From Rebecca billardiae RCC1528 (lineage: Eukaryota > Protista > Haptophyta): a stretch of DNA of 64,000 nucleotides. Below the pieces are notes generated by a model, which did not search any database, had not been told where the DNA came from, and saw only the letters and a program-made list of their open reading frames with translations. The DNA is taken from NCBI GenBank assembly GCA_965240325.2, contig OZ251242.1, positions 930,001 through 994,000 on the forward strand, written 5' to 3'. Both the position numbers and the translations under genes were made by a program. Shown one piece after another: positions 3,150-49,051 of the stretch (the stretch's first letter is position 1; the number at the start of each line of letters is the position of its first letter).

Positions 3150-3578
3150 ATTTGCCTTACGCAGGACCCCAGTCGGGGATAGTGCGGTCCGTTTGCTCCT
3201 ACTGCTGCCGCTGACAGTAAGAGGGCTGTTCTTTTTTCAACGTGACAGCGAGTTCGCCACTCTCTCTGCTCCACGGCGACGTATTCAGGGGATTTATTAC
3301 CCGCCCCCCTAACCCAGTATCGGCCGACTGCCACTGAGGGGTGCTCCACGGCTTGCACCCAGCGGGAATTGTTCCCCCGACAGGGACACAGACAGAAGAT
3401 AAAGATGGGTCGCATCTGAATCGTCAGTCGGCGTCCCTACCGGGGGGTGGGTCTAAGTGAGTCGTGGGGGTTGGGCAAGCGGCGGTACCGCCCCCCTACA
3501 CCCCGCGAGTCACCAGCACAGAGGCTGAACAGTGAACCGCTACTGGAGTGGCTTTTGATTGAATGTCAACAGCCTACT

Positions 3579-29394: not shown

Positions 29395-32300
29395 CTACTT
29401 GAAGTGAAACTGAAAGGGGCCAGCAGCAGGGCCAGGGTTGTCGGCCGTTGGGTCATCAAAGTGAAACCCGCCGCCGCCTCCGCCCGCGGCGGGCCCGGAG
29501 CCGAACATGAGGTCGGCGAAGGGGCTCTTGCCCCACTTGGGCGGCTTGGAGCCCGTGCCGTCGTCGCCCTCGCCGAAGACGTCGGCGTCGTCCTCGTCCT
29601 TGTCCTTCACCACCTCGTCCAGGCTGCCCCAGAGCTTCGTCACGTCGATGCGATCGTCCGGCAGGCCGTCGTCGTGGTCGGCGGCGCCGCCGCCGTCCCT
29701 CGGCGCCGCCGCGCCCAGGCCGTCGCTGAGCTCGCTGTCGCCGCCGTCGCTGCTGCTGCTGGTATCGTCGTCGTCGGCGGCGGCGGATGCGGCGGCGCCG
29801 CCCGCTGCCGCGCCGCCACCGGCGCGCGCGGCTGCCGCCGGCGCGCCGCTCTCCGCATCATCGCCGACCGGGCCGAGCACGCTCGCGAGGCCGCGCGCCG
29901 CCTCCCACGCGCCCGCGACTTGGCGCATCAGCTCCTCCTGGCGTGCCGCGGTGGGCGCCCACTTGCGCAGCATGGCGGCCGCGCTGTCCTGCGTGCGCGT
30001 CGCCTTGTACGGGTCGGCGCCTGCGCCGCGCGCGCGCGCGCCGCGCGGGGCAGGGTGTAGCGCGCGGCAGCCGGCGCGGCGCATGCGTCAGTCAGCGCAC
30101 GGATGCGCACGGCGCGAGCTGCGCGCGCGGCCGAGCGGCGCGGCTCGGCCGCGCGCGGGCGCTTGGAGCGCGGCCTGCACACCGGCTTTGATCAGCTCGC
30201 ATGCGGCCGCAACGTAGCCCGCCGCGCACGCGGCATGCAGCGGCGTGCGCCCCGACGCCGAGTGCACGTCGACGCGAGCGCCTGCGACGCGCGCGCGGGT
30301 GAGGGCCCGGCGGGTCCGGATGATCCGCGCGCGCGGCGCGGAGTCAGCGCGCCGCGCGGTGTGCGCGCGCCGCGCGGCAGCCGCCGCCAAGCCGGGACGG
30401 TGGCGCGCGCGGTGCGGGCGCGCGCGGCGCTCGTGAGTGCGCCGCTGGCGCGCGCGCGCGCGCGCGCGCGCACCGGCGGAGACCAACCTCGCGACCATCC
30501 GCGCGTGCCCCGCGCCGGCGGCGGCGTGCAGCGGCGTGCAGCGCGTCTTGGCGCCGCGCGCGTTGACGAGCGCGACGCGGATGGCCGCGCGCGCGGCGGA
30601 GATTCGATCGAGAAGACCGGCTCCGGCGGCGGCGCCCGCGCCGTCGAAGTGCAGCCGCGCGTATGGGCGCGGCGTGTGCGGCGTGCGCGGCGCGCCCGCC
30701 TCGCCGCCGTGCCGGCCCGCGCTGCCGCCGGTGCCGCTCCGCTTCGCCGAGCGTGGCTTGGGCGAGCCGCCGCCGCCCTCGGCCGCGGCCGCGGCACCCG
30801 CCCCCTCGGCCGACGCCGACGCGGCCGCGGCCGGCCGTGCCTTAGGCGTGGTCGGCCGCGCCTTCCCCGGCGTGGCGGGTCGGCCGGCGCTGACAGCGCT
30901 GCCGCGCGTGTCCGCGCGGCGCGGCGCCGCGCTGCCGCGCGTGTCCGCGCGGCGCGGCCCGGCCGAGCCGCGCGTGTCCCCGCGCCGAAGCCCGCCGCCG
31001 CCGGCCGCGCCGCCACCGCCGCCGCCGCCCGCCGGCCCTCCGCCGGCGATCCCGGTGCGCAGCTCGCGCTCGGCGATGTTGCACTCCTCCTCCACGGCGG
31101 CGAGCAGCACCTCGAGTGCGCGCATCGAGTCGGTCGCCGCGGCCGCGTGCCAGAGCCACTCGCCCGGCACCGCCGCCGACTCGTCCGCCGCGGGGACCGG
31201 CGCGCGCAGCCGCCAGTGCGCCAGCTGCATCGGCTGCCGGCCGGAGAGCGCGGCCAGGGCGTCCGCGGCCGCTCGCTCGTCCTTTGCTCTAAGCGCGTCC
31301 CAAAGCTGCCGGCCCGCGGCCTGCGCGGCGGCGTGCAGGCCCTGCGCGGCGGAGCTCAGCTCGGCCAGGCTCCCGAACGGCGTGTCCGCGTGCTTCGCCG
31401 CGAGCGCCGCGCGCAGATACCGCGGCGCCGCGCCGATGCCGTCCTCGACGAGCATGCGATGATGCGCGCTCGCCTCCGCGCGCACCGCGTCCGCGGGGAG
31501 CGCGCGCGCGTGCACGCTGACCGCACGCATGTACCAGGCCTCGGAGGATTTGGCACTCTTGTGGTAGAAGAGCGCGAGCCGCCCCTTGAGCGAGAGCTGC
31601 CCGTCGAGCAGCACCCGCGCCGGCGGCAGCGTCGCCGAGAGCTGCCCATCGACGTACGCGCGCGCCTCGCCCGCTTCCGCGTTCACAACTAGAGTGAGCG
31701 CTCTCCAGTGGTTGGAGGCCGCGCCGGGCACGCCGCCGCGCTCGGCGCGCGCGGTGCTCGACTCGAGGACGACGAGGCGCTCCGCGCGGTCGACCACGAG
31801 CTGCGCCTCCGCCTCCGCCTCCGCCATCGTCGCCTCCGCCGCGCCCTCGCCCTCGCCGCCGCCGCCGCCGCCCGCGGGCGCCGCCTGCGAGGCCTTGTGG
31901 CGCGCGGCCGCGCGCTTCGCCCAAGTGTCGAAGCCGCCCGTCGACAGCACGTTGCGCGCGCGCAGGCCGACGGACGGGATCTTGACGACGACGGTGAGCG
32001 TGTACTGGTTGAGGAACGCGCCGCCGCCGTTCTTGCGGAACGGCAGCCGCACGACCGCCGACGCGGCGCCCCACCCCTTCACGCAGCGCAGCCCGCCGAC
32101 GCGCGTGTGTTGCCACGGCCCGGTCAACTCGAGCCAGCGCGGCCCGCCCGCCTGCGTGCCCGGCGTGCCGCGCGTCAGGTCGAAGAGGCACGAGGTGCGC
32201 GTGGTGCGCGGGTTGGCCGCGACGCCGGCGCGCGCGCGGCGCATCCACTCGAAGTCGGTCTCGTCCATCTCCGCCTCCGCGCGCGCGCGCGCCGCGGCCA

Positions 32301-33303
32301 GCTCCTCCTGCTGTCGCTCCTCGAGCGCCGCCTCGCGCTGCCGCTCCGAGTCGACTGTGGCGTCGAGCAGCGCGCGCAGCTCGGCCTCCGCCTTGGGCTG
32401 CACGCGCGAGAGGCGCGCGTCGGCCGCGGCGGCGGAGGCGCGCCCGCCGCCCTCGCCCCCCGCCGCCGCGTCCGCCGCGTCCGCCGCGTTCGTCTCCTCG
32501 TCGTCCGCGCGGTCGGCGAGCGCGCTCACAAACTCGGCGTAAGTCACGTGTGCGCCGTGCGCCGCGATCGAGCGGACGAAGAAGAGGATGTCGGCGGGGG
32601 TGAGCTCGGGCAGGTCGAGCCACTCCATCGCGCCGTACATCTCCGCCAGCGAGATCAGCCCGTTCTGGTCCGCGTCGAACTTGGTGAACGCGTCGTGCAG
32701 CAGCAGGCCGCGCGTGCGCAGCGCGGCGCGCACGCGCACCGCCTGCGCGCGCTGCTTGAGCAAGCTCCACTCATCCTCGAGCGTGAAGAGCTTGGCGAGC
32801 GGCGTCTGGTCCCAGCGGCGCGCGGCGCGGCGGCGGCACGCGATCATCGACGCGAACCACAGCCGGCGGCGCGTCGGGTCCGCCGGGATCGCGCGCAGCA
32901 GCGAGTTGAGCTCGGACGGCTGGAAGTGCATGGCGCAGTCGATAAATCGGCACGAATTGTGCGCCGCGGCCGCCTGGTACTCGGTCGGCGCCGTCCAGTG
33001 CGCCGTGGCGTCGAGCACGGCGTCGGAGGCGGCGACGCAGCGCAGCGCGAGGGCGACGCGGCGCTTGGGCACCACGCCCTGCCCGCTCGCCTGCCGCATG
33101 TGCATCGCGCACCGGATCGTCTCCGCCTCGGCCAATGAGAGCACGGCCCTTATCCTGCCATCCTCCTCCGCGCGGAAGACTCCGGAAGTCAGGACGGCGC
33201 GCAGCTGCTCAAAGGAGAGCGAGGCGCCGGCCGCGCGGCGGGCGAGCTCGTCGGTGGTCTCGGCCTCGGAGGGCACGCCGCCGCGCACCGGCGCGCCCGC
33301 CTC

Positions 33304-33340
<37 letters not shown>

Positions 33341-35700
33341 GCCGCCGCGCCGCGCGCGCCCGCCGCCGGGTGGCTGTTGCGTCGGGAGCGCTGGCGCGCG
33401 GCGCGCGTGCCGGCGGCGCGCAGCAGCTCGCGCGCCTCGAGCTCGCTGAGCGCGACGTCGGGCTCGGCGCGCAGCGTGGACACCGCCTCGGCCGCGTCGA
33501 ACACGCCCAGCCCCTGCGTGTCCAGCAGCCGCACGATCCGGTGCACCGCGCGCCGCCTTCGCAGCAGCCCCTCGCGCGAGCCGTCGCCGACCGCGCGCTG
33601 CTGAGCGTCGTTGAGCGCGATCATCTCTGCGGCGTGCACCGTCGCGCCGACGGCGGCGTCGAGCAGCTGCTCGAGCGGGCGCGAGGCGTACTCGTCGTCC
33701 GCGGGCTGCGCGCGCGCGCGCGCCGAGCCGCGGCCCTCGCCGCCACGTCCGCCGGCGCACGGGCAGCAGCCCGGCGCGCGCGCGCGAGAGGCGTCGTCGA
33801 CGTCCGACGGTGGCGGCGGGCGACTGGATGGCGCGCGCGTCGCCCGCACGCTCACCGCGCGCGAGGTGGCCTTCTTGGCGGGCGCGCCGCGGCGTGCGGC
33901 GGCCAGCCTGAGCTGCGGTGCGCCCTCCCACCCCGACGCCGCCGCGCGGAGCAGCTCGCGCAGCTCCTCGTCCGTCAGCGCCACGTCCTCCGCCGAGCGC
34001 AACGCGGCGACCAGCTCCGCCGCCTCGAACGCGCCCGAGTCGTCGACGTCCAGAAGCCGAAGCGCCGTGCCGAGCCGCTCCTGCTGCGCCGGGGAGAGCT
34101 CGGCGGGGCGCGGCGCGGCGGGCGCGAGCGCGGACGTGTCGGGCACCCAGTCGAGCGAGCACACCACGTTCTTCAGCCGGCGCTCGCCGCGCCACTTCAG
34201 GTCGAAGTGGTTGCGGCTCACCAGCAACCACTGTGGGAACGGCAGCGGCGCGCGGCCGTGCAGCGCAAACTTGGCCGCGGGGAACACGGAGCCTCGCGCC
34301 TCGAGCGCGCGCGCGTCGGCGAGGAGCTCGATGGGCCAGCGCTCGGCCTCCTCGCCGTCGCGCGCGTACGCCAGGTCGGCGTACCGCTCCATCTCGATCT
34401 CCTGCTCCTGCTCCTGGTCCTGCTCGCGCTCCGCCTCCGCCTCCTGCTCTCGAGATTGCTCGGTGTCGAGCTCGAGCAGAGCACGCTCGGAGCCCTCGAC
34501 GGCGGCGAGGATCTCCGAGACGATCTGGCGCTCCTCGGGCGTGCGCACGTAGTCGGCGAAGCCCTCCGCGCGCTCCGCGAGCACCGCCGCGTACTCCTGC
34601 CGCTCGGGCACCCCCGACGGCACCTCCGTCTCCACCTTCTCCAAGAAGACGTCGAGCGCGCGCCCAAGGCTCGCGCGCAGCTCAATCGATCGGCGGCGCG
34701 AGCGCGAGCCGGCGGCGGCGCGCCCGCCGCCGGCCGCGCGCGCGGAGGGCCGCGCGGAGGAGGCGGGATCGTGCAGGATCGACTCGACGAGCGCGAGCCG
34801 CGCCGTCCCGTCGCCCTCCGCGCGCAGCAGCTCGAGCCGCTCCGACGCCTCGAAGAACGGCAGGCTGGTGCCCTTCCGCAGGCCGACGGCGCGCGCGCGC
34901 GACACGAGCCGAGCGAGCGCGCTCGCGTCGCGCAGCTGGACCGCGCGGCGCAGCTCGTCCTCGAGGGCGGTGCGCGGCTTCTGCTCGCGCCACGGGAAGC
35001 GCTCCCACGTGGGCAGCGGGCTCACGCCGTGCGAGCGCGCCAGCTCGCGCAGCTGCTCCTCGTGCCGCGCCTTGAGCGCGGCCACCTCGAGCGCGCGCGC
35101 GCTCAGCCGGCGCGCGGTCAAAGCGTGCTGCTCACGCCTCGGCGCGAGCACGTGCAGCGCTGAGGCGTGGTCGACGGTGGCGACGAGCCACGCGACGAGC
35201 GCGCGCTCGGCGCGCGAGATCGGCGGCGGCTCGCTCGGCTCGCTCAGCTGCGACGTCGAGAAGTACCACAGCCCGCCGAATGAGTCGCCCCCAGCGCTCC
35301 AGGCCGCCTTGGCGTTCAGACGACCGTCGTCGAAGTAATCTTCCGGACGGAGCCGCGCGCGCGGCACGCCCTCCTCGTAGTCGCCGTCGTCGTACGCGAC
35401 GTCGTACACCGTACCCGCCTCGCTCCCGCCCTCGTACTCGTCCGACGGGTGCACCGCCACGATGTCGCCCGGGTACCACCGGCCGTACCCCTTCCAGTTG
35501 CCGACCACCCTCTCGCCGTCGTCGTAGTCGTAATCGTCGGGATCAAAGTCGTCGTCGTCGTCGTCGTCGTCCTCGTCGTCGTTGGAGCCGGAGGCGGAGT
35601 CGTCGTCGGAGCCGGAGCCGTCGGAGTCGGTGTCGCCGTCGCTCGGCTCGGACGTGGTGGGCGACGTGCCGCCGGCGGGCGCGGCGGCGGCGGGCTCGGC

Positions 35701-35735
<35 letters not shown>

Positions 35736-38700
35736 CCTTTGCTGCATCCGCCTCGGCTTTGGCCGCCGCGCGCAGCTCGCGCGAGACGACCGCCGCGGCC
35801 GGCGCGAGCTCCGAGCCGCTCACCATCGCCACCGCGAGCTCCGCCGCGCTCGCGCTCACCTCCACGCCCGCCGCGCGCCCCGCGAGCCACCGCGGATCCT
35901 CGAGCGCGCGGACGGCGCGGCTCGCGGCCGGCAGCTCGAGCAGCAGCAGGGTCGCCTCGTCCTCGTCGCCGTGTGCGCGCTGCAGCGCGGCGATCGCGGC
36001 GGCGCGCGGGACGGGCGAGCCGCGCTGGCGCAGCTGCTTCCGCAGCGCGCGCAGCGCGAGCGCGTCCACGTCGGACGGCAGCGAGCCCGCGCCGATCCCC
36101 TCCGCGGCGCGCACCTTGGCGTCGAGCTCGTCGTGCGTCTTGGCAACGTCGGCGCGCACACTCTCGAGCGAGCGCTCCTTGTGCGCCAGCTCGCGCTGCC
36201 AGTCGAGCAGCGCGCCGAGCACGCCGGCCCAGGTGCACAGCACCTTCACGCTGGCGAACTCGCTCGCCGCGTTCTTCCCGCCGCCGCGCGAGGGCGCCTC
36301 CGCCGCGCGCGCCGCCCGCAGGCCGAGGCTCGCCAGCGCCGACACGAAATCATCCGGCAGCTGCGAGGCGACGCCGCGCGCGGAGCCGCCGCCGCCGCCG
36401 CCGCCGTCGTCGTCGTCGTCCGCTTCGGCGGCGTCAGAGCCGACGTTCTTGCCGATCAGCGCGACGGTGAGCTTCTTGAGCTGCGTGACGAAGCGCACCG
36501 CGCTCGCCGCGTCCACGCGGTCCCCGCCAAACCCAACCGCGCGCCGGAATCGCACGGCGAGCGGGTCGGCCGCGGCCGCGGCGCGCGAGCCGTAGCCATC
36601 TGCCGCTGAGATACCGGCCTCGCCGCCGAGCGGGGCGCCGACGTCGGCGGCGAGGTCGAAGACGACGAGGACGAAGGAGCACGCCTCGCGCGCCGCGTCG
36701 TCCGCCTCGATCCGCGCCGCGTCGCGGCACAGCCCCTCGAGCGAGAGGCGCAGCCCGGGAGCGAGCTCGTTGAAGACCGAGCCCAAATTGCTTCGGAGCT
36801 CGGGGCCGCGCGCGTGCGCCGCCTCCACGTCGCCCTCGAGCATCGCGGCGAACTGGCGCAGGCGGAGGAGGCGCGACTGCGCGGCCTCGAGCGCGTCCGA
36901 CGCGGCGTCGCCCGCCTCGCCGCCCGCCTGCTCCTCCTCCGCGGGCGACCAGCGCGGCCGCGCGCCGGCCGCGCCGCTGCCGCCGCCGCCGCCGCCGCCG
37001 CCGGACGCGCCTGTCGCCGGCTCGGCCGCGGCGGCCGCGTCCTCCTCGTCGCCCGGCGCGTAGTAGCCCGCCTCGACGGCGGCGCGCGCGACGGCGAGCA
37101 CGTCGGTGAGCCACGCCGAGTCGCTCACGTCGCCGCCGCCCTCGTCGCCGCCCGCCTCGCCCACGCCGAGCAGCGCGCACAGGCACTCGCACGCGCGCGC
37201 GAGCGTCGCGGTCGACTCGGTGCGAGCGGTCGCGCGCTCCGCTTCGTCCGAGGCATCGGCGAGGCGCGAGAGGGCGAGGACCCAGTTGTGCAGCGCGCGC
37301 GCGGCGGCGCCGCCGCCGAGCTCGGCCGCGCTCGGCTTCGCGTGCGCCGCCGCGTACTTCTGCACCGCGCGCGCCTGCTGCGGGCTCAGCGCGAGCGCGT
37401 CGACGCGCGCCGCGCGCGCGCCGAGCGGCAAGCTTAGTAACCGCTGAGTAACGGATTGCCAGCCCGGCTTGAGCTCGAAGAGCGCGCAGAGGACGTCGCC
37501 GAGCGCGCGCATCGTGGGCGTGGGCAGCAGCGTCTCGGCGAGCGCGTCGAGCGCGCCGCGCGACAGCGCGCGCAGCCCGTCCATCGCCTCGCGCAGGCCG
37601 CGCTGCGCGGCGCCTAGCGCCTCGGCGACCGCCGGCGGCACCGGCGGCGGGCGCGAAAACGCTTGGAGCTCGGCCGCGTCGTCGGCCGCGAGCTCGCGCA
37701 GGGCGCGCGCGGCGACGGTGGCGAGGCCGCGGAGCGGGCGCATCCGCGCCTCGTGCATCGCGAGCGCGCGCCCGGCCGCGCGGTGCGCGCGCTGCTGCGC
37801 CTTGAGCTCGCGCGCGCGCCCCTTGTGCGCGCGCGCCGCCTCCTCCCAGCCCGCGGCCAACACGAACAGGCGCGCGCCGTCGCGCGAGATGACGGAGCCG
37901 TCGGCATCGACGAGGACGACGGTCCAGGGCGAGGCGCCGCCGATGTCGAAGGTCTGGCGGAGCAGCGCGCGGCGCGACTTGTGCGCGAACGGCACGGCGA
38001 GCCACGGCATCCCGCGGAACTCGGCGGGCGAGGCGGTGCGCGAGACGAAGACGATCTCGATCGAATCTGCATGCGCCGCGTACGCCGCCTTGAGAGCGGA
38101 GAGCAGCCGCGCGCCCGCCGCCTCGGCGAGCTTCGAGTCCTCGCCGGCGGCGGTGGAGAAGAAGAGCGCGACGACCTTCCCCGCGATCGCGTCGCGCGTC
38201 GCCGTCCCCGTGCTCCCCGAGACGAACGCCGTGCCGATCGCCTCGAGCACGAAGCCGCGCGAGTCCTGCACTCGAAAGTAGTGGTGGCCTGCCATCAGCT
38301 CGGCAAACGCGCGCCGCCGCCACACGTTCGCGAGGTTCTGCGCCATGAGCATGTCGTACTGCGTGGCCTCGGTGCGCATCGCGTTGAGCACGAGCCACGC
38401 CGCCACGTCGTCGAGCGAGAGCGGGGGCGCGGGCGCCGCCGGGTTGCTCGCCGCCGCCTGCTGCATGGAGAGAGCGTTGGCAGCGGGCGACACACGCTCG
38501 CCGCGGTCGAGCGGGCGGCGCCGCTGGCCCGCCTTGGCGAGCTCGCGGCACATGAGGCCCTGCACCTCGGGGGTGAGCAGCAGCGCGACGGTCTGCCCGT
38601 TGCCGATCCCGCGCATCCGGAACGCGCCCTGCGCGTAGTCGCGCCACACCATGTCCTTCCCCAGCGTGAGCATCGCGCGCGCGCCGGGCGACTGGGCAAT

Positions 38701-41700
38701 GTCCATTCCGGTCGTGTGAATCTGATCGTAGAACGTGAAGCGCTGGTGAGGCGAGATCCCGGACTGGGAGAGCTTGAGCACGCGCCACGTGGCGCGGACG
38801 AGGATCATCTTCTGGTCCGACTCGTCCAGGAACACCACGCCCTCGCACCACCGCGCGAACGCGGGCATGCGCAGCAGAAACACCGCCACCTCCAGGTTAG
38901 AAAGACCGGTGACGAGCGCGCCGGTGTCAATGAGCGCGTGCGCGCGCGGCTGCGCGCGCGCCACCTCCGCGAGGAGCGACTCGACGCTCCAGCCGTCGTC
39001 GAGCACGGTGACGGAGACGACGGTGTGGTCGGTGAGCACCGTGAGCATCTTCCCGTCCGAGCCCTTCTCGTACCCGCACCGGCCGAGCGCGCGCGGCAGC
39101 AGGTCGGACGGCGTGCCGGAGAAGCCGACGCGCCGCCCGAACAGAGTCTCCCCGCCCACCTCCTGCCCGGACGCGGAGAGCTTGGTGACCTGGTGCTGCA
39201 TGTACGCGGGGAAGACGACGTTCTCGAGCAGCCAGTGCACGGTGAGCGGCTGCCGCCGGAGCAGCCGGTACAGCTTGCCCATCTGCTCCTCGTCCGACGA
39301 CTGCAGCAGCCACAGAGGCACGACGACCCGCCCGTCGTCGATGCGCACGCCCGCGCGCTCCGCCTCCGCGGCCGCGGCGAGCGCCGCGGGGCGGCGCGAG
39401 CCCTTGACGAGCCCGCCGGCGCGCTCGACCCACTCGGCGTACGTGATCGCGGACTTGCGCGCGGAGAACGGCCCGACCTCCTTCTCGAAGTTGGTGCGCA
39501 CGATATGAATCACGTCGTCCTCAAAGTCGACGCGCCGAAGTCCTTCGTACCGGTAGCCGAGCACGGTGAGGCCGATGATCACGTCGGGGTGCGCGAACTC
39601 GGAGGCGCGCGCGGGGACGTCCTTGCCGACGAAGGGGATGGCGAGCTTGAAGCGCGAGCGCGGCATCAGCGGCTCCGCCTGCTTGAGCCGCGCGTACTCC
39701 TCCTCGGTGAGCAGGCCGAACGTGACGCGCGATATCTTCTGCAGGCAATGCGGCAGCAGCGTGCCGAGCCACTCGGCGACGAGGTTGAGCATCTTGAACG
39801 CCTTGGGCGCGAGCGCGCGCGCCGCGAGCGCGTGCAGGCGGCGCGTGGCGAGCTCGGCGGCGCGCGCCTCGGCGGAGCCCGCCGCGCCGCCCTTCGCCGA
39901 CGCCGACGCCGCCGACGACGCCGGCACCGCCGCGACGATCTCGGCGGGCCAGTGCGCGTCCGCGGCGAGCTTGGACGCGTCGCCGGTGATGTACGCGAGG
40001 ATGTGGGTCTCGGAGAGGCCGCCGACGTGCTGCGCCTCGAGCCAGAGCATCGCCCACAGCGCCATCACCGGCTTCATCCGCGCCTCGTACCAGTCGAGGT
40101 TGAGCAGCACCAGGTGCGGCGACGACTGCAGCGCGTGGCTAGCGTAGCCGGCGGCCAATTCCTCCGCGAGCGTCGCGAGGATTGCCCTGGCGCGCGCCGA
40201 CTGCTCGAACGGAACCGACATGTTGCCGCCCGACTCGACGGCGAAGATGGCGTCGAGCAGGTGGATGGCGAGCGTCCAGCGCTCGGGCGAGAAGTCGAGC
40301 GGCAGCTTCGGCCCGATCGGGAAGTTGAGCTCCGAGCGCAGCGGGTGGAGCAACAGGTCGACCTCATCCATCACGAGCACGCCGCGCGCCTGGAAGAGCT
40401 CGAGCGCGGCCGCGAGCGCGCGCACGTCTCGCTCCATCGACGGGAGGTGCTTGCGCGCCGGGTCGCGGAGGAGGTCGAGCTTCTCGAGCAGCCGGAGCTG
40501 CACGCTCTTGACCGACGTCGCGGTGCACAGCACGACGCCGCGGTGCGCCACCGCCGAGCGCAGCTTGTCCACCAGCTCCCACGACGCATCGGCCGAGCGG
40601 TCAAAGGAGAGGGTGAAGACGCGCTTGCGGATGATCGACGAGAAGGCCGAGCGCAGCGTCGCGCGCGTCTGCTCGAGCAGCGCGGGCGGCATCATCTGCA
40701 CGACGAGCGAGTGCCCGTCGCCGAGCATCAGCGAGAGGATCGGCGAGATCACCGTCGTCTTGCCGCCGCCCATCAGCATCTGCTTGACGAGCGGCGAGCG
40801 CGCGCGCACCGCGGAGACAAACTCAAAGATCAGCTCCACCTGCGCCTTGCGCAGGACGAGGTTGTGAATGAACTCGAAGAGGAGGAGGCGCGGGTCGAAG
40901 GCGAGCGTGGGCGCGGTCGGGCCGCCGTGCTCGGGCCGCACGAAGTGCCGCCCGGTGCGCAGCAGCGTCGCGAGCGTCTCGGCACGCAGCGAGATGAGCG
41001 ACGGAAGGTCGGCGCGTACAGTAGCCTCGCTCGCGCGCCCGCCCGCCTCGGCGACGGTGCGCAGCGAGGCGGCGGCCTCGGCGAGCAGCAAGCGCAGCGC
41101 CTCCGCCTCCGCGATGCACCGGTTCGTCTGCCCGATCCGCGTCGCGTGGCACACCGTCGCCACCACCACGTCGAGCAGCGCGCGCGCCGTACGCGCCGAG
41201 ACGAACGGATTCAGCCGTCGCACGTCGCCAACGGCGCGCGACGAGATGAGGAAGCAGAAGACGAGCTCGAGCGTGAGGCGCGCCTCGAGACCACACGCCT
41301 GGCGCAGGACGAAGCCGAGCCTCCGCGCGCGCTCCTCGCGCGACGACGACTCCGGCCCGTGCGCGCTCGTGCCCTCCGCCGCGCGCCGCGCCGCCGCCGC
41401 GCCCACCGCCGCGCCCGCGCTCGTGTCGACGCGGTTGGCTGTTTTCTCAATCACTGGCAGAGCGCGCGAGACGTAGGCCGAGTCGTGCGCGCGTCGCTCG
41501 CGCAGCGCGAGGAGCAGCTTGTCGAGCGAGGCGCTCGCGCGCTCGAACAGCGCGGCGCCCGCCCGGCCGTCCGCCGCGCTCGCAATCTCCTGCGTCGACG
41601 GCAGCAGCAGCAGCCGCAGCGGCGACGCGCCGTTCCGTTGCGACGCGTACTCGGCCATGTCTGCCGCCATCCGCGCCAGCATGTCTCGCGCCACCTTGGA

Positions 41701-42265
41701 GCGCGCGTGCGCGTGCGAGCCGACGTCGAAGCGCAGGTCGGGCGAGATCTCGGCGATGCCGAGCTCCGCGCGCGGCACGGCGCGCACGTGCGCCTCCAGC
41801 TCGAGCACGGACAGCGGCTCCGTCGCGAACGCGCGGCAGTCTGACTCGGTCGTCGTCAGAGACGGCTCGCCGAGCGCCGCGCCGTCGACCGGCTGGAGCA
41901 CGCGCCGCGCGCACGAGTAGTCTGTCGGCGCGGGGAGCACCCAGCGGCGTGGGGGCAGGCCGGCGAGCGAGGACGCGCGCGCGGCGGGCGCGTGCGCGAA
42001 CGGCGGCACCGCCGCGCGCGGGTCGACGCCGTGCGTGCGCGCGTCCGAGGCCTCCAGCTCGTCGGCCCACGATGACGCGCTCTCGAGTTCGGCGCGAGCG
42101 GTCGCCTCCGCGTCGGCGGCGAGGGAGTTGACGTCGACGAGGGGCGTGCCGTACCGCTCGCCGCCGCCACCGCCGCCGCCGATGCGCTCGATGCGCGTGT
42201 CGTCCAGCTTGAGCGGCGCCGAGTCCTCCGGGCCCACCACCACCACGCCGCCCCAGCCCCAGTCG

Positions 42266-42299
<34 letters not shown>

Positions 42300-45200
42300 A
42301 TCCGCCGCCGCCGTATCCGCCGCCTCCGTACCGCGAGCGCGAGTTGAAGTGCGCGCGCGTGAGCGCGTCGGCGCGGCGCTGGAGCATGCGGTCGCGCAGC
42401 GCGCGCGACGCGGGCCCGCCGCCGTCCGTGCCGGTGAGCGCGCGCAGCTCGGCGAGCATCGAGCGCACGAGCACGCCGAGCGGCGCCTCGCTCGAGCGCC
42501 CGTCCCGCGGCACGCCGGTGAGCGTGTCGCCGCGCTGCCGGCGGGTGTCCTCAAACTGCGGCAGGAAGGGCGCGAGTTTCGGCCTGCGCGCGAGGGTGTG
42601 CAGCACCGACGCGAAGAGGCCCGGCTCGTACGCGTCGTGGAAGAGCGGCAGCAGCAGCCGCACGAGCGAGGGCCCCGACGGCGCGTCGGTCGCGAGCCGC
42701 GTGCGCAGCGAGCCCTGCGCGAGTTGATACATGAGGAGGAACCCTGCGCCGCGCAGCGTCACCTGCGGAGGGCCGCCGCTCGGGTTGATCGCGGCGACGA
42801 GCTTGAGCACCTCGTCGACGGAGGCGACGTACATGTGCATGTGCGGCACCTGCAGCTCCTCGAGCAGCGAGCGCACCCGCTCCGGGTCGCGCGCATACTC
42901 CAGCACAGACGGATCCCAGTACTCGAGCCAGCGGAGCGGGCGGCGGCGCGCAGGGATCTCGACGACGCACTCCGCCTCGCCCGCCGCCTCGGCGCGCAGC
43001 TGCGAGCGGCGGTTCTTGCAGAGCAGCACCTGGTGCAGCGCGAGCGCCTCGGTCCCGTCGCGCAGCCGCGGGTCCGCCGCGTCGACCACGCACCGGTTGA
43101 GCAGCGCGAGCTCCTCCTCCGCCGAGAGCCGACAGCTCGCGGACACGCGCGCGAGCTTGGCGGTGTACGCGGAGCATTCCTGGCTCAAGTTCCAGGGCAT
43201 CCGGACGGGCGCGTCGAGCATGACGAAGGAGAGCTTGAGCCGGCACGCGTGCGCGTCCGGGTGCATGTCCGGGCCGTGCGCGGGCGACGCCATGTGCCCG
43301 AGCAGCGTCGACTCCTCGAACGAGAGCGCCGTGTCGGTCGAGACGGTGTCGGTGAGCGCGAGCGCCGACGAGTAGGAGCGGTGCAGCAGCCGCAGCAGCA
43401 GTAGGTACAGCGCGGACGCGAGGGTGGACGCGGAGAGGAAGGAGAGCGAGACGTGGATCTTGTACGTGTAGTACGGCGCCTCGATCATCTCCAGGTACTG
43501 CCCGTTCGCGAAGAGCATCACCAGCTCCGTCGAGAAGGGCCGCGAGGCGATGGGTGTGCGCACGGGCAGGTGCGCCGGCACGAGGACTGACAGATCGCCC
43601 GACTGCGCGTGCTCGAGCAGCAGCGAGTGCGGCATGCCCGCGAGCAGCTGGACGGTGGCCGGCGTGCGCCCGCCATTGGTCACGCACATGTCCGCGTGGT
43701 CGAGCGAGAAGAGCCGCACCTTCCCGTCCGCCCCGCGCCGCGCCTCGAAGCTGAGCTTGAGGCGCGGCAGCTGCACGAGAGCCAGAGACTTGCCGTCTGC
43801 CGGCACGCGTTGCGCGACGCTCAGGTCGTCGTCCGGGCTCGCCACCGCCGGAGCGCGCGCCCAGGCGAGCACGTGCGCGAGCTGCTCGAGCCGCACGAGC
43901 AGCTCGGCCAGCGACGCGAGCGACGAGCCCGCCGGCGCGTTGAGCAGGTCGAGCAGCACGAGCTCAGCATCCGTGTACTCGCCTGGTTCGCGCGGCGCGT
44001 CGAGGCCGCCGCCGTCCGCGCGCGCGCGCGCCTGCTCGCCGCCGCCGCCGGCCGCGTGCGCCTCGTCGCCGCCGCCGCCGCCGGCGGCGGCGGCGCTGCC
44101 AGCGCCGCTGCCTCGCTCGAACTCGTTCACGAGCCCGAGCGAGTCGAAGGCGCGGTCGAGCAGCAGCGGCAGCAGCTGCGCGGCGCGGCGCGCGCGGCTG
44201 GCCGTCTTGCCGCGCGCGCCGCCCTTGGCTGCGCGCGCGCCGCCCGCGCGCTCGCCGCCAAGGGGCTTGGGGTCGACCATCTCGACCGCGCGCGCGGCGG
44301 TGCGCGCGTCGCCCGCGCGGCCCACGAGCGCCGCCACGCGCAGCGCCGCGCCGAACGGGCACTCAAACGGCCCGCGCAGCAGGCCGTGCCGACGGAGGTA
44401 CTCCTCGGCGGCGGCGACGACGATGGCCACCTCGGCGCGGCGGCGGCGCAGCCTCGCCGCCGGGCGGCGGCGCACGATGGCGACGCACGGCGGCAGCGCG
44501 AGCGGGCTCTCCGCGTCGGCCGCCGCGCGCGCCGCCGCGCTCGCCGCCGCGGGCGTCCCCGGCACGAAGCCGCGCGCGCCCGCGCTCGCAACGTGCGCCC
44601 CGAGCTGAAGGGACACCGTGAGAACGTGCCGCTCGCCGCGCCGCAGCGGGTAGCCTCGGATCAGGTCGGACTCGTCCTGCCAGAAGGCGTGCGAGGCGAG
44701 CAGCGCGTCGGGCAGCACGCCGCGCAGCAGCCGCGGCGGCAGGAACGTTTCCGTGCCCAGCGAGAGATTCTCGTCCACCGTCCACTCGCGCGTGATCACC
44801 GCCGAATGCGGCACCGAGTCCGAGGCCGCGTAGGGGTGTCCCGCACCGTGCCGCTCCCACGGCGGCCACGGGTGCGAGCGCGGGTCAGGCGCGGGCTGCA
44901 GCGCGGCGAGGCAGAAGCGGCTGTCCGAGGTGTACTCGAGCCGGCGGTAGTGCCGCCGCCCGTGGCTCTCCAGTCGGTACGCCTGAACCATCCGCCGCTC
45001 GCGATACACAAAGAACTCCCGGAATATTCCGGTGGTGCCCGGCAGGCAGCCAATCAGATACGCGACCGTCGCGTCCGCCGGCAGCGCCGCCTCCGGCAGG
45101 TAGAGCTCCAGCGGCTCGGGCAGCGTGAGGTACGCCTCGCGCACGGGCTCGAACACCGCCGGCAGCCACGCTTTCTCCTGCGCGCGCGCGCGCGCGCGCC

Positions 45201-46284
45201 GAGCGCGCGGCCGCGCCGCAGCGGCGCGAGAGGGCGGTGGCGCGTGAGCGCGCGCGAGCGCACCGCGGCCGCAGGCGCGCGCAAGGGCGCGCGGGGCGCG
45301 CGGGCGGGCACGGCGCGGCGCGGCGCGCGGCGCCGTGCCGTGGGGAAGAGCTCGCCCGGGAAGTACGGCCGCCACAGGTCGGACGGCACCTCGCGCTCGT
45401 CGGGGCTCCACCACGCCACGTCGTGCCCGCGCCCGACAAGACGATACTCGGTGCGGTGGGTCGCGACAGAGAGGATGGAGGCCTGCATCGAGACGGAGCC
45501 GAAGAGGGCGCGCACGTCCGGGTGCTGCGCGACGGCGGGCGGGAGCGCCTGCGGGTGCGACGCGCGCAGCGTGAGCTGCATCAGCTGCGCGTCGATCTCC
45601 ACCGCAAGCTCGTCGTCCAGCACGGAGCTGACGCCCGTCTCCGGCGCGGCGCCGGCCGAGGCGCCGCGCTCGCCCGCGTCGCGCAGCCGCCTCGTGCCGT
45701 CCACGTCGTCGGCGGCGAAGGAGCGCTGCGTGTCGGGCGGGCCGCTGCGCGAGCCCTGCCCCGAGGCGCGGCCGCCCGCGCCCGCTGCGCCCGGCGAGCG
45801 AGGCCCGCCCTCGGCCGCGCCACCGTCGGCGTCGTCGTCCGAGCGCGCGCCCCGCGCGCCGCGGCCGCCCGCGCACGGCCCGAACAGGGACTCGAAGAGC
45901 GCCCAGGCTTTTGGCGAGGCGTTGGCGCGCGCGCCGCGCGCCGCGCCGCCCCCGTCGTCGCCGCCACTCGCGCCCTCGGCCGCGCCGCCGGGCTCGCTGC
46001 CCGGGCGCAACGAGCCCACGGCGACGCCGGGCGCGACCGCGCGATCGCCCGCGCCCGCTCGGTCGGCGCCGCCGCCGCCGCCGTCCGCGGAAGCGCCGCC
46101 GCCGTGCGCCGCGGCGGCGCGGCCACCCTGATAAGCCGAGTGCACGGCGAAGCGGCCGACGCTGCGCCGGCCGGCGACGTAGGCCCAGCGGTTGCGCGGC
46201 GGCGGCTCTGCTGCCACGGCCGCCCCGTCGTCGCCGCCGCCGCCGCGCGCGCCGCCGCCCGCCTCATCGGAGCCGCCGCGCTCC

Positions 46285-46330
<46 letters not shown>

Positions 46331-49051
46331 TGCCGCCGCCGCCGCCGTCGTCCTCGTCCTCGCCGCCGCCCGTCGAGTCGAGGTCGAGCGGCCCTGTGGT
46401 CGCGGCGACGCGGACGACGGTCTCCATCACCTCGTCGAGCTCCGCCTGCGTCGCGCGCGTGCGCAGCCAGATCACCAGCGCGCGCCGCGTGTGCTGCAGC
46501 GCCTCGTACAGCTCGTGCTCCGGGATGGAAAGCGCCGAGCCGCGCGCCGAGCCGGGGCCGTTGCCGTTGCCGGCGTCGCGCGTGTCGAGATTCCACTCGT
46601 GGCGGGTGACGAGGAAGACGAAGGCGGCGACGAGCTCGCGCGCGCGCGGCTCGTCGATCTGGCCCTGCCCGAGCGAGCGCGCGCCGAGCAGCACGTGCGC
46701 GTGCAGCGCGCACATCCGCTTGGTGTTTTCATCCAGCACCCACTCCTCCGAGCGCGCCGCGACCTCGGCAGCGAGCTTCGCGTACCAGCCTCGCACGATG
46801 GCGGCGAGCGGGCCGTGCAGCGCGGCGCGGAGCTCGGCGCGGAAGGCGGAGAGCTCGGGCAGCGCGGCGAGCAGCTGCTTCCGCGGCACCCCGCGGCACT
46901 GCTCCGCGCGGAGCGTCGGGTGCCGCCCGTGGCCCAGCCGGAGCAAGAAGGTAAGATGCGCCTCGACGCGCGCCGCCAGCCGGATCGTGTAAAGGATCAC
47001 CGGCGCCGTGGAGGAGACGGCGTGGCCGGTGTCGAGCTCGACGGCCTGGCGCACGAGGCGGACGAGCGCGTCGCGCAGCAGCGCAGGCGAGTGCACCAGC
47101 TCGTTCAGCAGCAGCCCGTGCGCCGTCGCGAGCAGCTGCGGCTCGGAGGTGGGCACGTCGACAATGTCGCCGCTCGAGTGCCGGAGCGGCAGGTGCGCGC
47201 CGGGTTCGAACAGGATCCCGTCGAGCGCGTCCTGCAGCGGCTGCGACTGCAGCGCGTGGATGCGGTCGTTCTGCGAGAAGAAGGAGAGGACGAGCGGGAT
47301 GCGCATGTACGGCACCGTGAGGAACGAGAGCAGCAGCTCCGAGTCGTGCTGCCCCAGCGCCTTGGCGTTGGTCACGTGCAGCGAGCCAAAGTCCGGCAGG
47401 TCCCACATGTGCAGGACGTCGTCCTCCGAGTCCGCGGGGAACGGCTGCGTGTACTCGGACGGGCTGGAGAGCGGGGCGAAGCGGCGGAGCGGGCCGCCGC
47501 CGGGCGGCGGCCGCGTGATCGCGCTGAGCTCGATGCCGAACGCCTTCACCACGAACGCGCCGTCCTGAAAGCCCCACGCCAGCTCGGCCTGCCGCTGACT
47601 GTAGGGCGAGCCGCGGTACCGCGGCACGCCGTCCGCGTGCCGCTTCGGGTTGGTGAAGAGCTTGGCGTAGAAGCAGATGTCGCGGTAGCAGGCGAACTCG
47701 GGGTGGTTCTTGATGAGCAGCCCGCTGTTGTCGCACACGTACCCCGGGCTCTCGCCCACGCCCTTCGGGTACGCGAGCCGCGAGCACAGCCCGCTCAGGA
47801 AGCGGTGCAGCGAGCGCTCCAGCCGGTGCGTGCGCTCGAACGCAAAGATTGGATCGCGCCGCTCGGCCACGCCCTCGAAGTAGTCGAGCGCGCGGCAGCG
47901 CGCGACGCCGAGCTCGGGCGTGAAGCACAGGATCGCGGGGGACTGCTCGGCGAGCACGCCCGCCGTGGGCGCGTACCCACGGCCCGGGTTGCCCAGCTCG
48001 GCGCCGACGCCGCCGCCGGCGAGGTGCAGGGACACGGGGGACGGCATGTCCGTCGCGACCCGCCGGATCACGGCGTCGGCGATCGCCGCGACGCAGAGCG
48101 GCACGATGGTGCGCACGGCGTCGATCGCGCGCGTGTGCTGCACCGAGGCCACCGCCGCGGCGAAGTGCTCCACCAGCCGCTGCAGCAGGATCAGAATGTC
48201 GAGCTGCGTGTCGTAAGTCATCGGCGTGTCCGCCCACACGCACGCGCGCCGCGCCGCCGCCGCCTTTGCGCCGCCGGTGGGAGTGGTGGCGGCGGTGGGC
48301 GAGGGCAGCGGGGCGGCGCGCGCGCCGTCCGCCGCGCCGCCCGCGCGGCGGCGCGCGGGCGACTCGGGCACGGGCAGCAGCACGGTGAACGTGTGCTGCA
48401 GCATCGCGAGCTGCAGCTGCGTCGCGTTCTTGACCGAGTGCGTCTGCACCGCGAGCAGCGTGCAGAGCCGGTCGCAGTGTCGGAGCGCCTCGACGGCGGT
48501 GGCGAGGTCGGGGATGCGGGTGGGCTGCTGCAGCAGGTCGATGGGGAGGTACAGCGCCAGCTCCTTCTGGCTGCCCGGGTCGACGGGCCCGCGGCGGAGC
48601 AGCCGCTCCGCGAGCGCGTGCAGCGGCGGCGTCGCCGGCGGCTTGGCGAGCCGCCACGGGAACTGAAGCGAGTGGCGTGTCAGCAGGCGGACGCCGTCCG
48701 CCGAGATGATCGAGCGGTCGGACGCGTCGAGCAGCAGCACGCGCGGGATGTCCGAGACGTCGTACGCCTGCGCCAGCTCCGCGCGCTCGCGCGACGCGCC
48801 GAACGGCACGCACAGCCACTCGGGCATCCCCGCCGCGTACGCCGCGTGCGCGTCAGCTTCAGTGTCACACGAGACGTAGACCACTTCGAACGCGTGCCCG
48901 AGCGCGCGCAGCTTGGTGCGCACGGAGCGGAGCTGCGCGGAGAGGCGGACGCACGGCACGCACCACGAGGCGCCAAAGTACAGCGCGACGACCTGCGTGC
49001 CGCCGAGCGCCGCGCTCGTCGGCTCGGCCGCCGAGGGCTGCTGCGCCTCGC

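What the first reader, a model, noticed from the sequence alone, without database searches (positions are those of the whole stretch)
35090..37760. Nested dynein microtubule-binding-stalk-like units inserted after a non-AAA ATPase core
Seen: ALRELAADDAAELQAFSRPP; then EAMDGLRALSRGALDALAETLLPTPTMRALGDVLCALFELKPGWQSVTQRLL...AVQKY...AAARALHNWVLAL; then ACECLCALLG...VKVLCTWA, and SRAERALVAWLVATVDHASALHVLAPRR. These echo the dynein heavy-chain stalk/MTBD pattern (L..L...DI.E.K....PP..V..V.EAVC.LL...P.W...AA..LC.WV.A....V.PKR), flanked by coiled coil. Inference: a helicase-like ATPase has acquired dynein-type microtubule-binding stalks, possibly a new kind of MT motor or crosslinker.
Basis: inference. 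Interest (0 to 1): 0.7.

Follow-up and report, generated by a model that had tools for sequence, protein, structure and literature searches.

The report
Dynein-type microtubule-binding modules in non-dynein ATPase
A giant algal ATPase that is not a dynein carries true, nested copies of the module that dynein motors use to grip microtubules, so that module is not exclusive to dyneins, though whether it still binds microtubules here is untested.

Summary
Observation confirmed. All quoted strings lie in one 5,262-codon minus-strand ORF (30088-45876), a giant DUF3638/DUF3645 P-loop ATPase with no dynein AAA modules.

The best unit (aa 2741-2889) is a true homologue of the dynein microtubule-binding domain (MTBD):
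- Pfam's PF12777 model misses it.
- A dynein-free family profile hits only dynein heavy chains in the PDB, at their MTBDs (best 2e-19).
- The profile hits real dyneins among 1.84 billion proteins.
- Profile-profile E is 7e-15 to 9e-18; reversed control 0.4.
- The AlphaFold model superposes on solved MTBDs (Z 14.7, rmsd 3.4 Å over 141 residues).

Three flanking fragments (H1-like, H2-H5-like, H6+CC2-like) align to one dynein MTBD only when the intervening inserts are removed (E 2e-9; controls 5e-7 to 1e-4). This supports a split outer unit with the complete unit nested inside it. A third hairpin is dynein-like only in its H6/CC2 return strand.

The architecture recurs in two paralogues, Tara Oceans contigs and Chrysochromulina tobinii.

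Microtubule binding is untested: net charge and the H1 lysine equivalent are not conserved in the family.

The scan had already noted an MTBD-like module in a paralogue elsewhere in this genome (s1-336730).

The parts
30088..45876 (-). Open frame of 5,262 codons for the giant protein. The first ~240 codons are Arg-rich and probably not coding; the true start is unknown.
   Evidence: colinear with paralogues and orthologues
40246..40893 (-). DUF3638 P-loop domain (aa 1662-1877), with Walker A GGGKT and Walker B DEVD
   Evidence: Pfam PF12340, 109-113 bits; motifs read
39565..39663 (-). DUF3645 (aa 2072-2104)
   Evidence: Pfam PF12359, 50.7-53.7 bits
37837..38169 (-). Thioredoxin-like (nucleoredoxin-type) domain without CxxC, aa 2570-2680
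   Evidence: PF13905 E 2.6e-4, 21.7 bits, below the 27-bit cut-off; orthologues P0022 and others pass it; alignment
37696..37863 (-). Outer stalk, outgoing helix (CC1), aa 2672-2727
   Evidence: single long helix in both AlphaFold models; aligned to CC1 of whole-stalk structures
37639..37761 (-). Piece A: end of CC1 plus the H1-like helix of the split outer unit (aa 2706-2746)
   Evidence: hhalign to dynein positions 198-238, E 2e-3 alone; local hmmsearch domain 1
37210..37656 (-). Unit B: complete dynein-type MTBD on a short coiled-coil stub (aa 2741-2889)
   Evidence: VIA Z 14.7 to 6rza_X and Z 14.2 to 3err_A; Foldseek top 50 all dynein; PDB profile hits 2e-19; hhalign E 9e-18
37024..37221 (-). 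Piece H23: H2-to-H5-like helices of the outer unit (aa 2886-2951), including 'ACECLCALLG'
   Evidence: hhalign E 0.015 alone. It raises the joined score to 72.4, against 48.6-55.4 with other filler. Conserved in orthologues.
35896..36945 (-). Unit C': long helical hairpin with a tip domain (aa 2978-3327). It sits inside the insert that splits the outer unit.
   Evidence: helices 289-362 and 519-573 in the model; hhalign P 79-91% overall; the tip alone shows no similarity
36088..36240 (-). H6-like motif plus CC2-like return strand of unit C' (aa 3213-3263), including 'VKVLCTWA'
   Evidence: hhalign E 3.3e-5 against reversed 0.056; top PDB hits of its profile are DNAH17 (0.021) and DNAH1 stalk (0.084)
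35344..35517 (-). Tudor/Agenet-like barrel (aa 3454-3511), absent from the aligned orthologues and the C3 paralogue at this place
   Evidence: weak Pfam Agenet 0.18 and Tudor_5 0.28-2.6; alignment
35032..35250 (-). Third piece: H6-like helix, Pro-Arg-Arg junction and returning helix (CC2) of the outer stalk (aa 3543-3615)
   Evidence: hhalign to dynein 309-381, E 1e-5, reversed 0.13; whole-stalk structures align out to model residues 911-919
33946..34080 (-). EF-hand pair (aa 3933-3977); a further EF-hand lies at aa 4393-4418
   Evidence: Pfam PF13499, 41 bits
30178..30540 (-). Ankyrin repeats (aa 5113-5233)
   Evidence: Pfam Ank/Ank_2

Best explanation
The region encodes a stalk apparatus homologous to the dynein stalk and its microtubule-binding domain (MTBD). 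It is built into a giant non-dynein ATPase of the DUF3638/DUF3645 family, which is SF2/DEAD-like (GGGKT, DEVD).

Anatomy:
- A dead thioredoxin-like domain is followed by a ~56-residue helix (CC1) that runs outward.
- At its end lies an H1-like helix.
- A complete six-helix MTBD (unit B) on a short coiled-coil stub is inserted there.
- H2-H5-like helices of the outer unit follow.
- A ~600-residue insert comes next. It holds a second long hairpin whose return strand starts with an H6-like motif, then a UBA-like stretch (named by eye, untested), an acidic tract and a Tudor-like barrel.
- An H6-like helix with a Pro-basic junction then leads into a ~60-residue return helix (CC2) that pairs with CC1.

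Shown: homology of unit B to dynein MTBDs; predicted MTBD fold; conservation of the whole arrangement in paralogues and marine orthologues; absence of dynein AAA modules.

Supported but not proven: the nested (split outer unit) topology.

Inferred (about 40% likely): at least unit B still contacts microtubules. The protein would then be an ATPase- and Ca2+-linked microtubule tether or crosslinker with a branched stalk. Otherwise the fold has been reused as a spacer or as a protein-binding head.
For: Sequence:
- Own-genome search puts two dynein MTBDs directly after the paralogues (compare).
- The three-paralogue profile against 1.84e9 proteins gave 124 hits at E<=1e-3. Of the 108 short hits, 66 carry PF12777. 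P0029, P0033 and P0052 are complete dynein motor regions hit inside their MT domain at 1e-8 to 4e-6.
- The 20-sequence profile against PDB returned only dynein heavy chains, best 2.2e-19.
- hhalign against 15 dynein stalks: P 98-99%, E 7e-15 to 9e-18, in register from CC1 through H6. Reversed controls gave E 0.08-0.4.

Fold:
- AF2 models have mean pLDDT 74 and 72.6, with 85-97 across unit B.
- The Foldseek top 50 are all dynein.
- VIA gave Z 14.7/rmsd 3.4/141 residues to 6rza_X and Z 14.2/rmsd 2.8/143 to 3err_A.
- ESM Atlas nearest clusters are PF12777 families.

Nesting:
- The pieces A, H23 and third align to complementary, ordered parts of one dynein MTBD (198-238, 237-267, 309-381).
- Joined in native order they give one alignment of 173 columns, score 72.4, E 2.3e-9. 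Wrong orders score 40-56 and foreign filler scores 49-55.
- Whole-stalk structures 8i3j, 5ayh and 3wuq align over model residues 1 to 911-919.

Conservation:
- Same order of pieces in the C3 paralogue and in P0002-P0006, P0022 and others.
- The Tara contig has DUF3638/3645 gene pieces directly upstream.
Against: - Pfam PF12777 itself does not hit the window's protein at E<=10.
- The nested topology rests on profile arithmetic and on aligned ranges of one AF2 model. I could not inspect coordinates or contacts, and the whole-stalk superpositions have rmsd 11-13 Å.
- The tip of unit C' shows no detectable similarity to MTBD helices H1-H5.
- On function: the residue equivalent to K3298 (PMC4987762) is not basic in orthologues. 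The end of H6 in unit B is acidic. Net charge of unit B varies from -5 to +7 in the family.
- No expression data could be obtained.
Confidence: 0.6

Rival explanations
1. The MTBD-derived fold has been repurposed. The modules are true dynein MTBD homologues but no longer bind microtubules. They would act as rigid spacers or as heads that bind another partner, and the coiled coils merely project other domains (UBA-like, Tudor-like).
For: Lack of family-wide conservation of the H1 basic residue and of positive net charge. An acidic H6 end in unit B. The same MT module occurs in this genome in a STAND NTPase-YEATS protein, which has no obvious link to the cytoskeleton. The inserts carry chromatin- or ubiquitin-type reader-like domains.
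Against: The window's own copy has net charge +5, pI 10.4, and an Arg at the K3298-equivalent position. The helices H1, H3 and H6 that contact tubulin in dynein are all present and well modelled.
Confidence: 0.35
2. The arrangement is not nested. There is one real MTBD (unit B) plus scattered relics of partial duplications (H1-like, H2-like and two H6-like pieces). These relics do not fold together, and the long helices simply form B's own stalk interrupted by an insertion in CC2.
For: Pieces A and H23 are individually weak (E 2e-3 and 0.015). Joined scores are roughly additive. The evidence for packing is indirect.
Against: The three pieces cover complementary parts of the MTBD in the correct order. 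Native order beats wrong orders and foreign filler by 17-32 score units. All pieces are conserved in distant orthologues. The third piece keeps the H6 Trp and the Pro-basic junction, not just heptads.
Confidence: 0.25
3. The resemblance is chance or compositional: Ala/Leu-rich helices in a very GC-rich genome mimic the dynein motif pattern.
For: Coding GC is 75-80% and Ala content is high. The Pfam HMM gives no hit.
Against: Orthologues from less GC-rich organisms show the same motifs more clearly. Reversed-profile controls collapse to E 0.1-0.4. PDB and 1.84e9-protein searches return dyneins specifically. The independently predicted fold matches solved MTBDs.
Confidence: 0.02
4. It is a fragment of a dynein heavy-chain gene or pseudogene, fused into this ORF by misassembly or read through in a stop-poor GC-rich frame.
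For: The genome holds about 20 dynein heavy chains, and GC-rich DNA gives long spurious ORFs.
Against: Identity to the genome's own dyneins is only 23%. The same fusion occurs in two paralogues and on independent Tara Oceans contigs. No dynein AAA families lie anywhere in the ORF.
Confidence: 0.02

Closest known systems
Dynein heavy chain stalk and microtubule-binding domain (Pfam PF12777 'MT'; structures 3ERR, 6RZA, 2RR7, 8I3J, 5AYH)
   Same: Six-helix bundle at the tip of an antiparallel coiled coil. Shared hallmarks are a Pro-containing turn after H1, Trp at the start of H3 and Trp in H6. The outer unit also keeps a Pro in CC1 and a Pro-basic junction before CC2. The strongest sequence matches are single-headed inner-arm dyneins (DNAH6 2e-19, DHC9/dynein-c 3e-16), ahead of cytoplasmic dynein (1e-10 to 1e-7).
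   Different: It is not attached to an AAA+ ring and emerges after a thioredoxin-like domain of a DUF3638 ATPase. The stalk arms are about 56-61 residues instead of about 100. One unit is nested inside another. Pfam's model does not detect it. The tubulin-contact basic residues are not conserved across the family.
DUF3638/DUF3645 giant eukaryotic P-loop ATPases (Pfam PF12340/PF12359)
   Same: The core passes both Pfam cut-offs. ESM Atlas look-alikes are DUF3638/DUF3645 clusters from fungi, rotifers and others, with DEAD/ResIII helicase clusters further down the list.
   Different: Of the look-alike clusters listed (three Pfam families shown at most), only one carries an added module, an EF-hand (row 19), and none is listed with the thioredoxin-like, MTBD-like, LamG or ankyrin parts seen here. 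No function is known for the family; seven papers mention it only in passing.
Paralogue in the same genome noted earlier by this scan (s1-336730; probably the C3 copy, L009/L017)
   Same: Same family and same order of modules, including the MTBD-like part; 39% identity over the unit B region.
   Different: That copy is longer (about 7,100 aa) and lacks the Tudor-like barrel at the aligned position. It does not describe nesting.
Other non-dynein carriers of the MT module seen here: a STAND NTPase-MT-YEATS protein (L019), an EF-hand-MT protein (L022), and a stand-alone tandem-MT protein from an unknown eukaryote (P0019)
   Same: They carry the globular MTBD part of PF12777 (profile positions ~58-245) without dynein AAA domains. 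P0019 is a complete gene between unrelated genes.
   Different: Their repeats are single or tandem, not nested. Their partner domains differ, and they are closer to the Pfam model (they pass or approach its cut-off).

Membership tests
Dynein MTBD / stalk domain (PF12777 MT) | Match to the curated Pfam model above its gathering score (24 bits) | tested here: not met
   No PF12777 hit at E<=1 on the whole protein or E<=10 on five sub-fragments.
Dynein MTBD / stalk domain (PF12777 MT) | Significant, specific and reciprocal sequence-profile similarity to dynein MTBDs | tested here: met
   Family profile against PDB: only dyneins, best 2.2e-19. Against 1.84e9 proteins: 66 of 108 short hits carry PF12777, and true dyneins are hit inside the MT domain. 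hhalign E 7e-15 to 9e-18, reversed 0.4.
Dynein MTBD / stalk domain (PF12777 MT) | Six-helix bundle (H1-H6) at the tip of an antiparallel coiled coil | tested here: met
   AF2 models built from dynein-free alignments: VIA Z 14.7/rmsd 3.4/141 residues to 6rza_X and Z 14.2/rmsd 2.8/143 to 3err_A. Whole-stalk structures align over 243-244 residues. Foldseek top 50 all dynein. These are predictions only.
Dynein MTBD / stalk domain (PF12777 MT) | Conserved tubulin-contact basic residues (mouse K3298 on H1, R3382 on H6; PMC4987762) and a basic binding face | tested here: inconclusive
   The K3298 equivalent is Arg in the window's copy but T/P/Q and others in paralogues and orthologues. The H6 end of unit B is acidic. 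Net charge is +5 here but -5 to +7 across the family. R3382 was not mapped residue by residue.
Dynein MTBD / stalk domain (PF12777 MT) | Binds microtubules | not testable with these tools
   Needs co-sedimentation, cryo-EM or localisation.
Dynein heavy chain | Ring of six AAA+ modules (AAA_5 to AAA_9, Dynein_heavy, AAA_lid_11, Dynein_C), with the stalk emerging from AAA4 | tested here: not met
   None of these Pfam families hit the 5,262-aa protein, although they are found readily in real dyneins with the same tool. The protein is not a dynein.
DUF3638/DUF3645 ATPases | Both Pfam domains above cut-off, with intact Walker A and B | tested here: met
   PF12340 109-113 bits (cut-off 31) and PF12359 51-54 bits (cut-off 25). 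GGGKT and DEVD read in the translation.
Thioredoxin-like (PF13905 Thioredoxin_8, nucleoredoxin type) | Pfam match above cut-off and a CxxC redox motif | tested here: not met
   21.7 bits against a cut-off of 27 in the window. Orthologues pass it. No CxxC at the aligned position in any member. This is fold-level kinship only, presumably without redox activity.
SecA-like DEAD motor (lead from earlier finding s1-336730) | Fold or sequence match of the ATPase core to SecA | not tested
   phmmer of aa 1501-2500 against PDB sequences found nothing at E<=1, and no SecA_DEAD Pfam hit appeared at E<=10.

The most novel reading that the evidence does not exclude
A family of giant SF2-type ATPases in haptophyte-type marine algae uses a branched, nested dynein-type stalk with two or three MTBD heads as an ATP- and Ca2+-regulated microtubule crosslinker or motor. 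That would be a microtubule mechanoenzyme that is neither kinesin nor dynein. One purely speculative site of action is the microtubule bundle of the haptonema or the flagellar roots. More broadly, the dynein MTBD would be a mobile module, also present in STAND NTPases and in tandem-repeat proteins. This would open a route to asking where the dynein stalk came from.
Probability: 0.12. Interest if true: 0.9.

Novelty: new variant of a known kind. Interest (0 to 1): 0.66.

Why it matters
The dynein MTBD is generally treated as a part found only in dynein heavy chains. Here it is fused to an unrelated, uncharacterised giant ATPase, in a nested arrangement that standard annotation misses. Pfam gives no hit, and the one named relative is called 'pdi-like protein'.

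If the module still binds microtubules, this family is a new class of microtubule-associated ATPase in ecologically important marine algae. If it does not, it is a natural experiment showing what else the MTBD fold and the coiled-coil stalk can do.

Either way the finding supplies non-dynein homologues. These can be used to test how stalk registry and head affinity are coupled, and to study the origin and spread of the stalk module.

I found no paper describing dynein-type MTBDs outside dyneins in the searchable library. That is absence in that library only.

Tried and rejected
- Direct Pfam scans of the whole protein and of five sub-fragments gave no PF12777 hit. It reflects divergence, because profiles built from the family find dyneins.
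- The word-indexed protein search with region 2690-2910 of the full-length query was blank. Its length filter excludes the fragmentary gene models that hold the orthologues.
- A local hmmsearch with a stalk HMM from this genome's own dyneins scored only 0-2 bits.
- Unit C' as a complete MTBD was rejected. The tip (model 355-520) and the CC1 arm score no better than their reversed versions, and only H6+CC2 is specific.
In the model the second motif opens the return helix of a self-contained hairpin (helices 289-362 and 519-573).
- A possible match of '..EEAERW' (aa 3807-3852) to the dynein CC2-base 'ERW' motif is too weak (i-Evalue 0.2) and lies at the wrong distance. I did not pursue it.
- phmmer of the ATPase core against PDB sequences found nothing.
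- Literature searches for MTBD-like domains outside dynein and for DUF3638/3645 gave nothing relevant.
- The joined-piece test was a local computation on columns of stored alignment A3.

Full report
**1. What is at the coordinates**

The finding lies inside one open frame of 5,262 codons on the minus strand, window 30088-45876. Coding GC is 72-80%.

Pfam finds these domains:
- DUF3638 at aa 1662-1877, 109 bits.
- DUF3645 at aa 2072-2104.
- EF-hands at aa 3933-3977 and 4393-4418.
- Ankyrin repeats at aa 5113-5233.

It finds none of the dynein AAA families. The translation shows a Walker A (GGGKT) and a DEVD Walker B. ESM Atlas look-alikes of the core are DUF3638/DUF3645 clusters, with DEAD/ResIII helicase clusters lower down.

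A thioredoxin-like domain without CxxC lies between the core and the finding. It scores PF13905 E 2.6e-4 here, below the cut-off, and is above the cut-off in orthologues.

The window is contig 25 of a 72-Mb, 41-contig assembly that holds about 20 dynein heavy chains in uninterrupted ORFs. The only named relative I found is from the haptophyte Chrysochromulina tobinii.

**2. Is the dynein likeness real?**

Pfam's PF12777 model does not hit the protein. Four independent lines show that the likeness is nevertheless homology.

(a) A six-frame search of the genome with aa 2701-2910 found two paralogues: contig 37 at 45% identity and contig 3 at 39%. The next best hits (E 0.04 and 0.08) were exactly the PF12777 regions of two dynein heavy chains.

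(b) A profile of the three paralogues was searched with HMMER against 1.84 billion representative proteins and gave 124 hits at E<=1e-3.
- Of the 108 shorter hits, 66 carry PF12777.
- P0029, P0033 and P0052 are complete dynein motor regions. They are hit inside their MT domain at 1e-8 to 4e-6.

(c) A 20-sequence alignment of the family (A3, containing no dynein) was searched against all PDB sequences.
- All 60 rows shown were dynein heavy chains, each matched at its MTBD.
- The best were DNAH6 (2.2e-19) and dynein-c, 2rr7 (3e-16).
- Cytoplasmic dynein scored 1e-10 to 1e-7.
- Profile-profile comparison with 15 dynein stalks gave P 98-99% and E 7e-15 to 9e-18, in register from CC1 through H6.
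- Reversed profiles fall to E 0.4.

(d) AlphaFold2 models built from these dynein-free alignments support the same conclusion.
- Mean pLDDT was 74.1 for 240 aa and 72.6 for 971 aa, with 85-97 over unit B.
- Foldseek's top 50 PDB hits were all dynein.
- VIA-align gave Z 14.7, rmsd 3.4 Å over 141 residues to the DNAH7 MTBD on microtubules (6rza_X), and Z 14.2, rmsd 2.8 Å over 143 residues to 3err_A.
- The nearest ESM Atlas clusters are PF12777 families.

Unit B (aa 2741-2889; window 37210-37656) is therefore a genuine, divergent dynein-type MTBD.

**3. Are the units nested?**

These orthologues are less Ala-rich, and the motifs look more dynein-like in them.

Apart from unit B, hhalign places three fragments on complementary parts of the dynein template:
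- Piece A (aa 2706-2746) on the CC1 end plus H1, template 198-238, E 2e-3.
- Piece H23 (aa 2886-2951, with 'ACECLCALLG') on H2 onward, template from 237, E 0.015.
- The third piece (aa 3543-3615) on H6, the Pro-basic junction and CC2, template 309-381, E 1e-5.

When the intervening columns are removed, the three pieces form one colinear alignment of 173 columns, with score 72.4 and E 2.3e-9. The controls all score lower:
- Wrong orders: 40-56.
- H23 replaced by other helical stretches of the same length: 48.6-55.4.
- The reversed profile: 15.9.

In the 971-residue model, three independent whole-stalk crystal structures (8i3j, 5ayh, 3wuq) align over 243-244 residues, spanning model residues 1 to 911-919. 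The helix at aa 3555-3615 therefore takes the CC2 position beside the N-terminal helix. The two helices are about 56 and 61 residues long, so their lengths match.

My reading is as follows. An outer, degenerate MTBD is split twice. Unit B is inserted between its H1 and H2, and a ~600-residue insert precedes its H6. This is supported but not proven. I could not inspect model coordinates, and the whole-stalk superpositions have rmsd 11-13 Å.

**4. The second insert**

It contains a long hairpin (helices at model 289-362 and 519-573).
- As a whole it aligns to the dynein stalk at P 79-91%.
- Dissection shows that only the H6-like start plus the CC2-like return strand (aa ~3213-3263, with 'VKVLCTWA') is specific: E 3.3e-5, against 0.056 reversed.
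- The tip and the outgoing arm score no better than their reversed versions.
- The top PDB hits of its profile are DNAH17 (0.021) and the DNAH1 stalk (0.084), both at H6/CC2.

It is therefore a stalk-like hairpin of probable MTBD ancestry, not a demonstrable MTBD.

In this paralogue the insert also holds a weak Tudor/Agenet-like barrel. That barrel is missing at the aligned position in the contig-3 paralogue and in the orthologues.

**5. Conservation and distribution**

The same order of pieces occurs in the contig-3 paralogue and in environmental proteins P0002-P0006, P0009, P0016, P0017 and P0022.
- P0004 lies on two Tara Oceans contigs. Gene calls with DUF3638/DUF3645 stand directly upstream on the same strand, and EF-hand, LamG and ankyrin parts lie downstream.
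- All relatives but one are unnamed. The exception is annotated 'pdi-like protein, partial'.
- The scan had already noted an MTBD-like module in a ~7,100-aa paralogue elsewhere in this genome (s1-336730). I confirm that module independently. Its 'SecA-like' label for the motor was not tested here.

**6. Does it bind microtubules?**

This is not known.

In favour: the fold is complete. The window's copy is basic (net +5, pI 10.4). It has Arg at the position of the conserved H1 lysine, which corresponds to mouse K3298, implicated in tubulin contact (PMC4987762).

Against: that position is T, P, Q or other residues in paralogues and orthologues. The end of H6 in unit B is acidic. Net charge ranges from -5 to +7 in the family, while 14 of the 15 dynein MTBDs sampled lie between 0 and +6.

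I put microtubule binding by at least one unit at about 40%. The main rival is a repurposed fold that serves as a spacer or binds another partner.

**7. Mechanism proposed (inference)**

- The ATPase and the thioredoxin-like block form a base.
- From this base an ~8-9 nm antiparallel coiled coil projects a composite head. The length is estimated from ~56-61 residues per strand.
- The head consists of the degenerate outer bundle, a well-formed MTBD on a short stub, and a second, longer hairpin.
- The return strand feeds into a conserved C-terminal half with EF-hands, a LamG-like domain and ankyrin repeats.
- If the heads bind microtubules, the protein would be a multivalent tether or crosslinker whose geometry could respond to ATP and Ca2+.
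- Nothing shows dynein-like coupling of coiled-coil registry to the ATPase.

**8. Novelty**

The domain type is known. Three things appear undescribed: its presence in a non-dynein ATPase, its nesting, and the wider set of non-dynein carriers seen in passing. Literature searches found nothing. I class it as a new variant of a known kind.

**Limits**

- Structures are predictions.
- The true 5' end of the gene is unknown.
- The joined-piece test was a local computation on stored alignment columns.

Noticed in passing
L019:4497-9998 (-) = G000 contig 32, about 42,500-48,000: An ORF of at least 1,834 aa in the same genome combines DUF4062, AAA_16/NACHT (STAND NTPase), a PF12777 MT match above the Pfam cut-off (29.9 bits, profile 84-245) and a YEATS domain. 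This is a second, unrelated non-dynein carrier of the dynein MTBD.
   Followed up: partly
L022:418-5097 (+) = G000 contig 7, about 104,400-109,100; L020:2221-2955 (+) = contig 12, about 1,357,200-1,357,950: A 1,560-aa ORF has an EF-hand pair plus an MT-like segment (E 6e-4, below cut-off). Separately, a 245-aa open frame holds a very dynein-like MTBD (40 bits) whose gene context I did not determine.
   Followed up: partly
L026:4001-6241 (+) (ENA metagenome contig, protein P0019): A complete 746-aa gene lies between unrelated genes (Surp/CID and an SLC12 transporter). It consists of about five tandem MT (MTBD) stretches and has no AAA domains. P0011, P0012 and P0093 show two or three such repeats. 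Tandem MTBD arrays therefore exist in unidentified eukaryotes.
   Followed up: partly
window 35344-35517 (-), aa 3454-3511: A Tudor/Agenet-like barrel follows a long acidic tract. The Pfam hits are weak (Agenet 0.18, Tudor_5 0.28). It is present in this paralogue but not at the aligned place in the contig-3 paralogue or the orthologues.
   Followed up: partly
window ~45150-45876 (-), first ~240 codons of the ORF: The Arg/Ala-rich translation looks like read-through of non-coding or other-frame DNA in a stop-poor GC-rich frame. The real start, or an upstream exon, is unknown.
   Followed up: no
PDB 7jtk chain C (Chlamydomonas radial spoke 1), residues 448-597: This chain aligns to unit B with Z 11.1, rmsd 3.5 Å over 141 residues, in the range of some isolated dynein MTBDs. 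It may be another non-dynein MTBD-like bundle or just a common helical arrangement. I could not identify the chain's protein name.
   Followed up: no
L015 (G000 contig 37, 518000-527999), minus strand downstream of the MTBD-like unit: The contig-37 paralogue's frame runs into a (VR)n stretch, that is a dinucleotide-repeat tract, followed by Arg-rich nonsense. This suggests an intron or a frameshift there, and its ORF is only 2,264 aa.
   Followed up: no
window ~34320-34460 (-), aa 3807-3852: A highly conserved acidic stretch followed by '..EE.ERW' recalls the dynein CC2-base 'ERW' motif. The match is weak (i-Evalue 0.2) and lies at the wrong distance from H6.
   Followed up: partly
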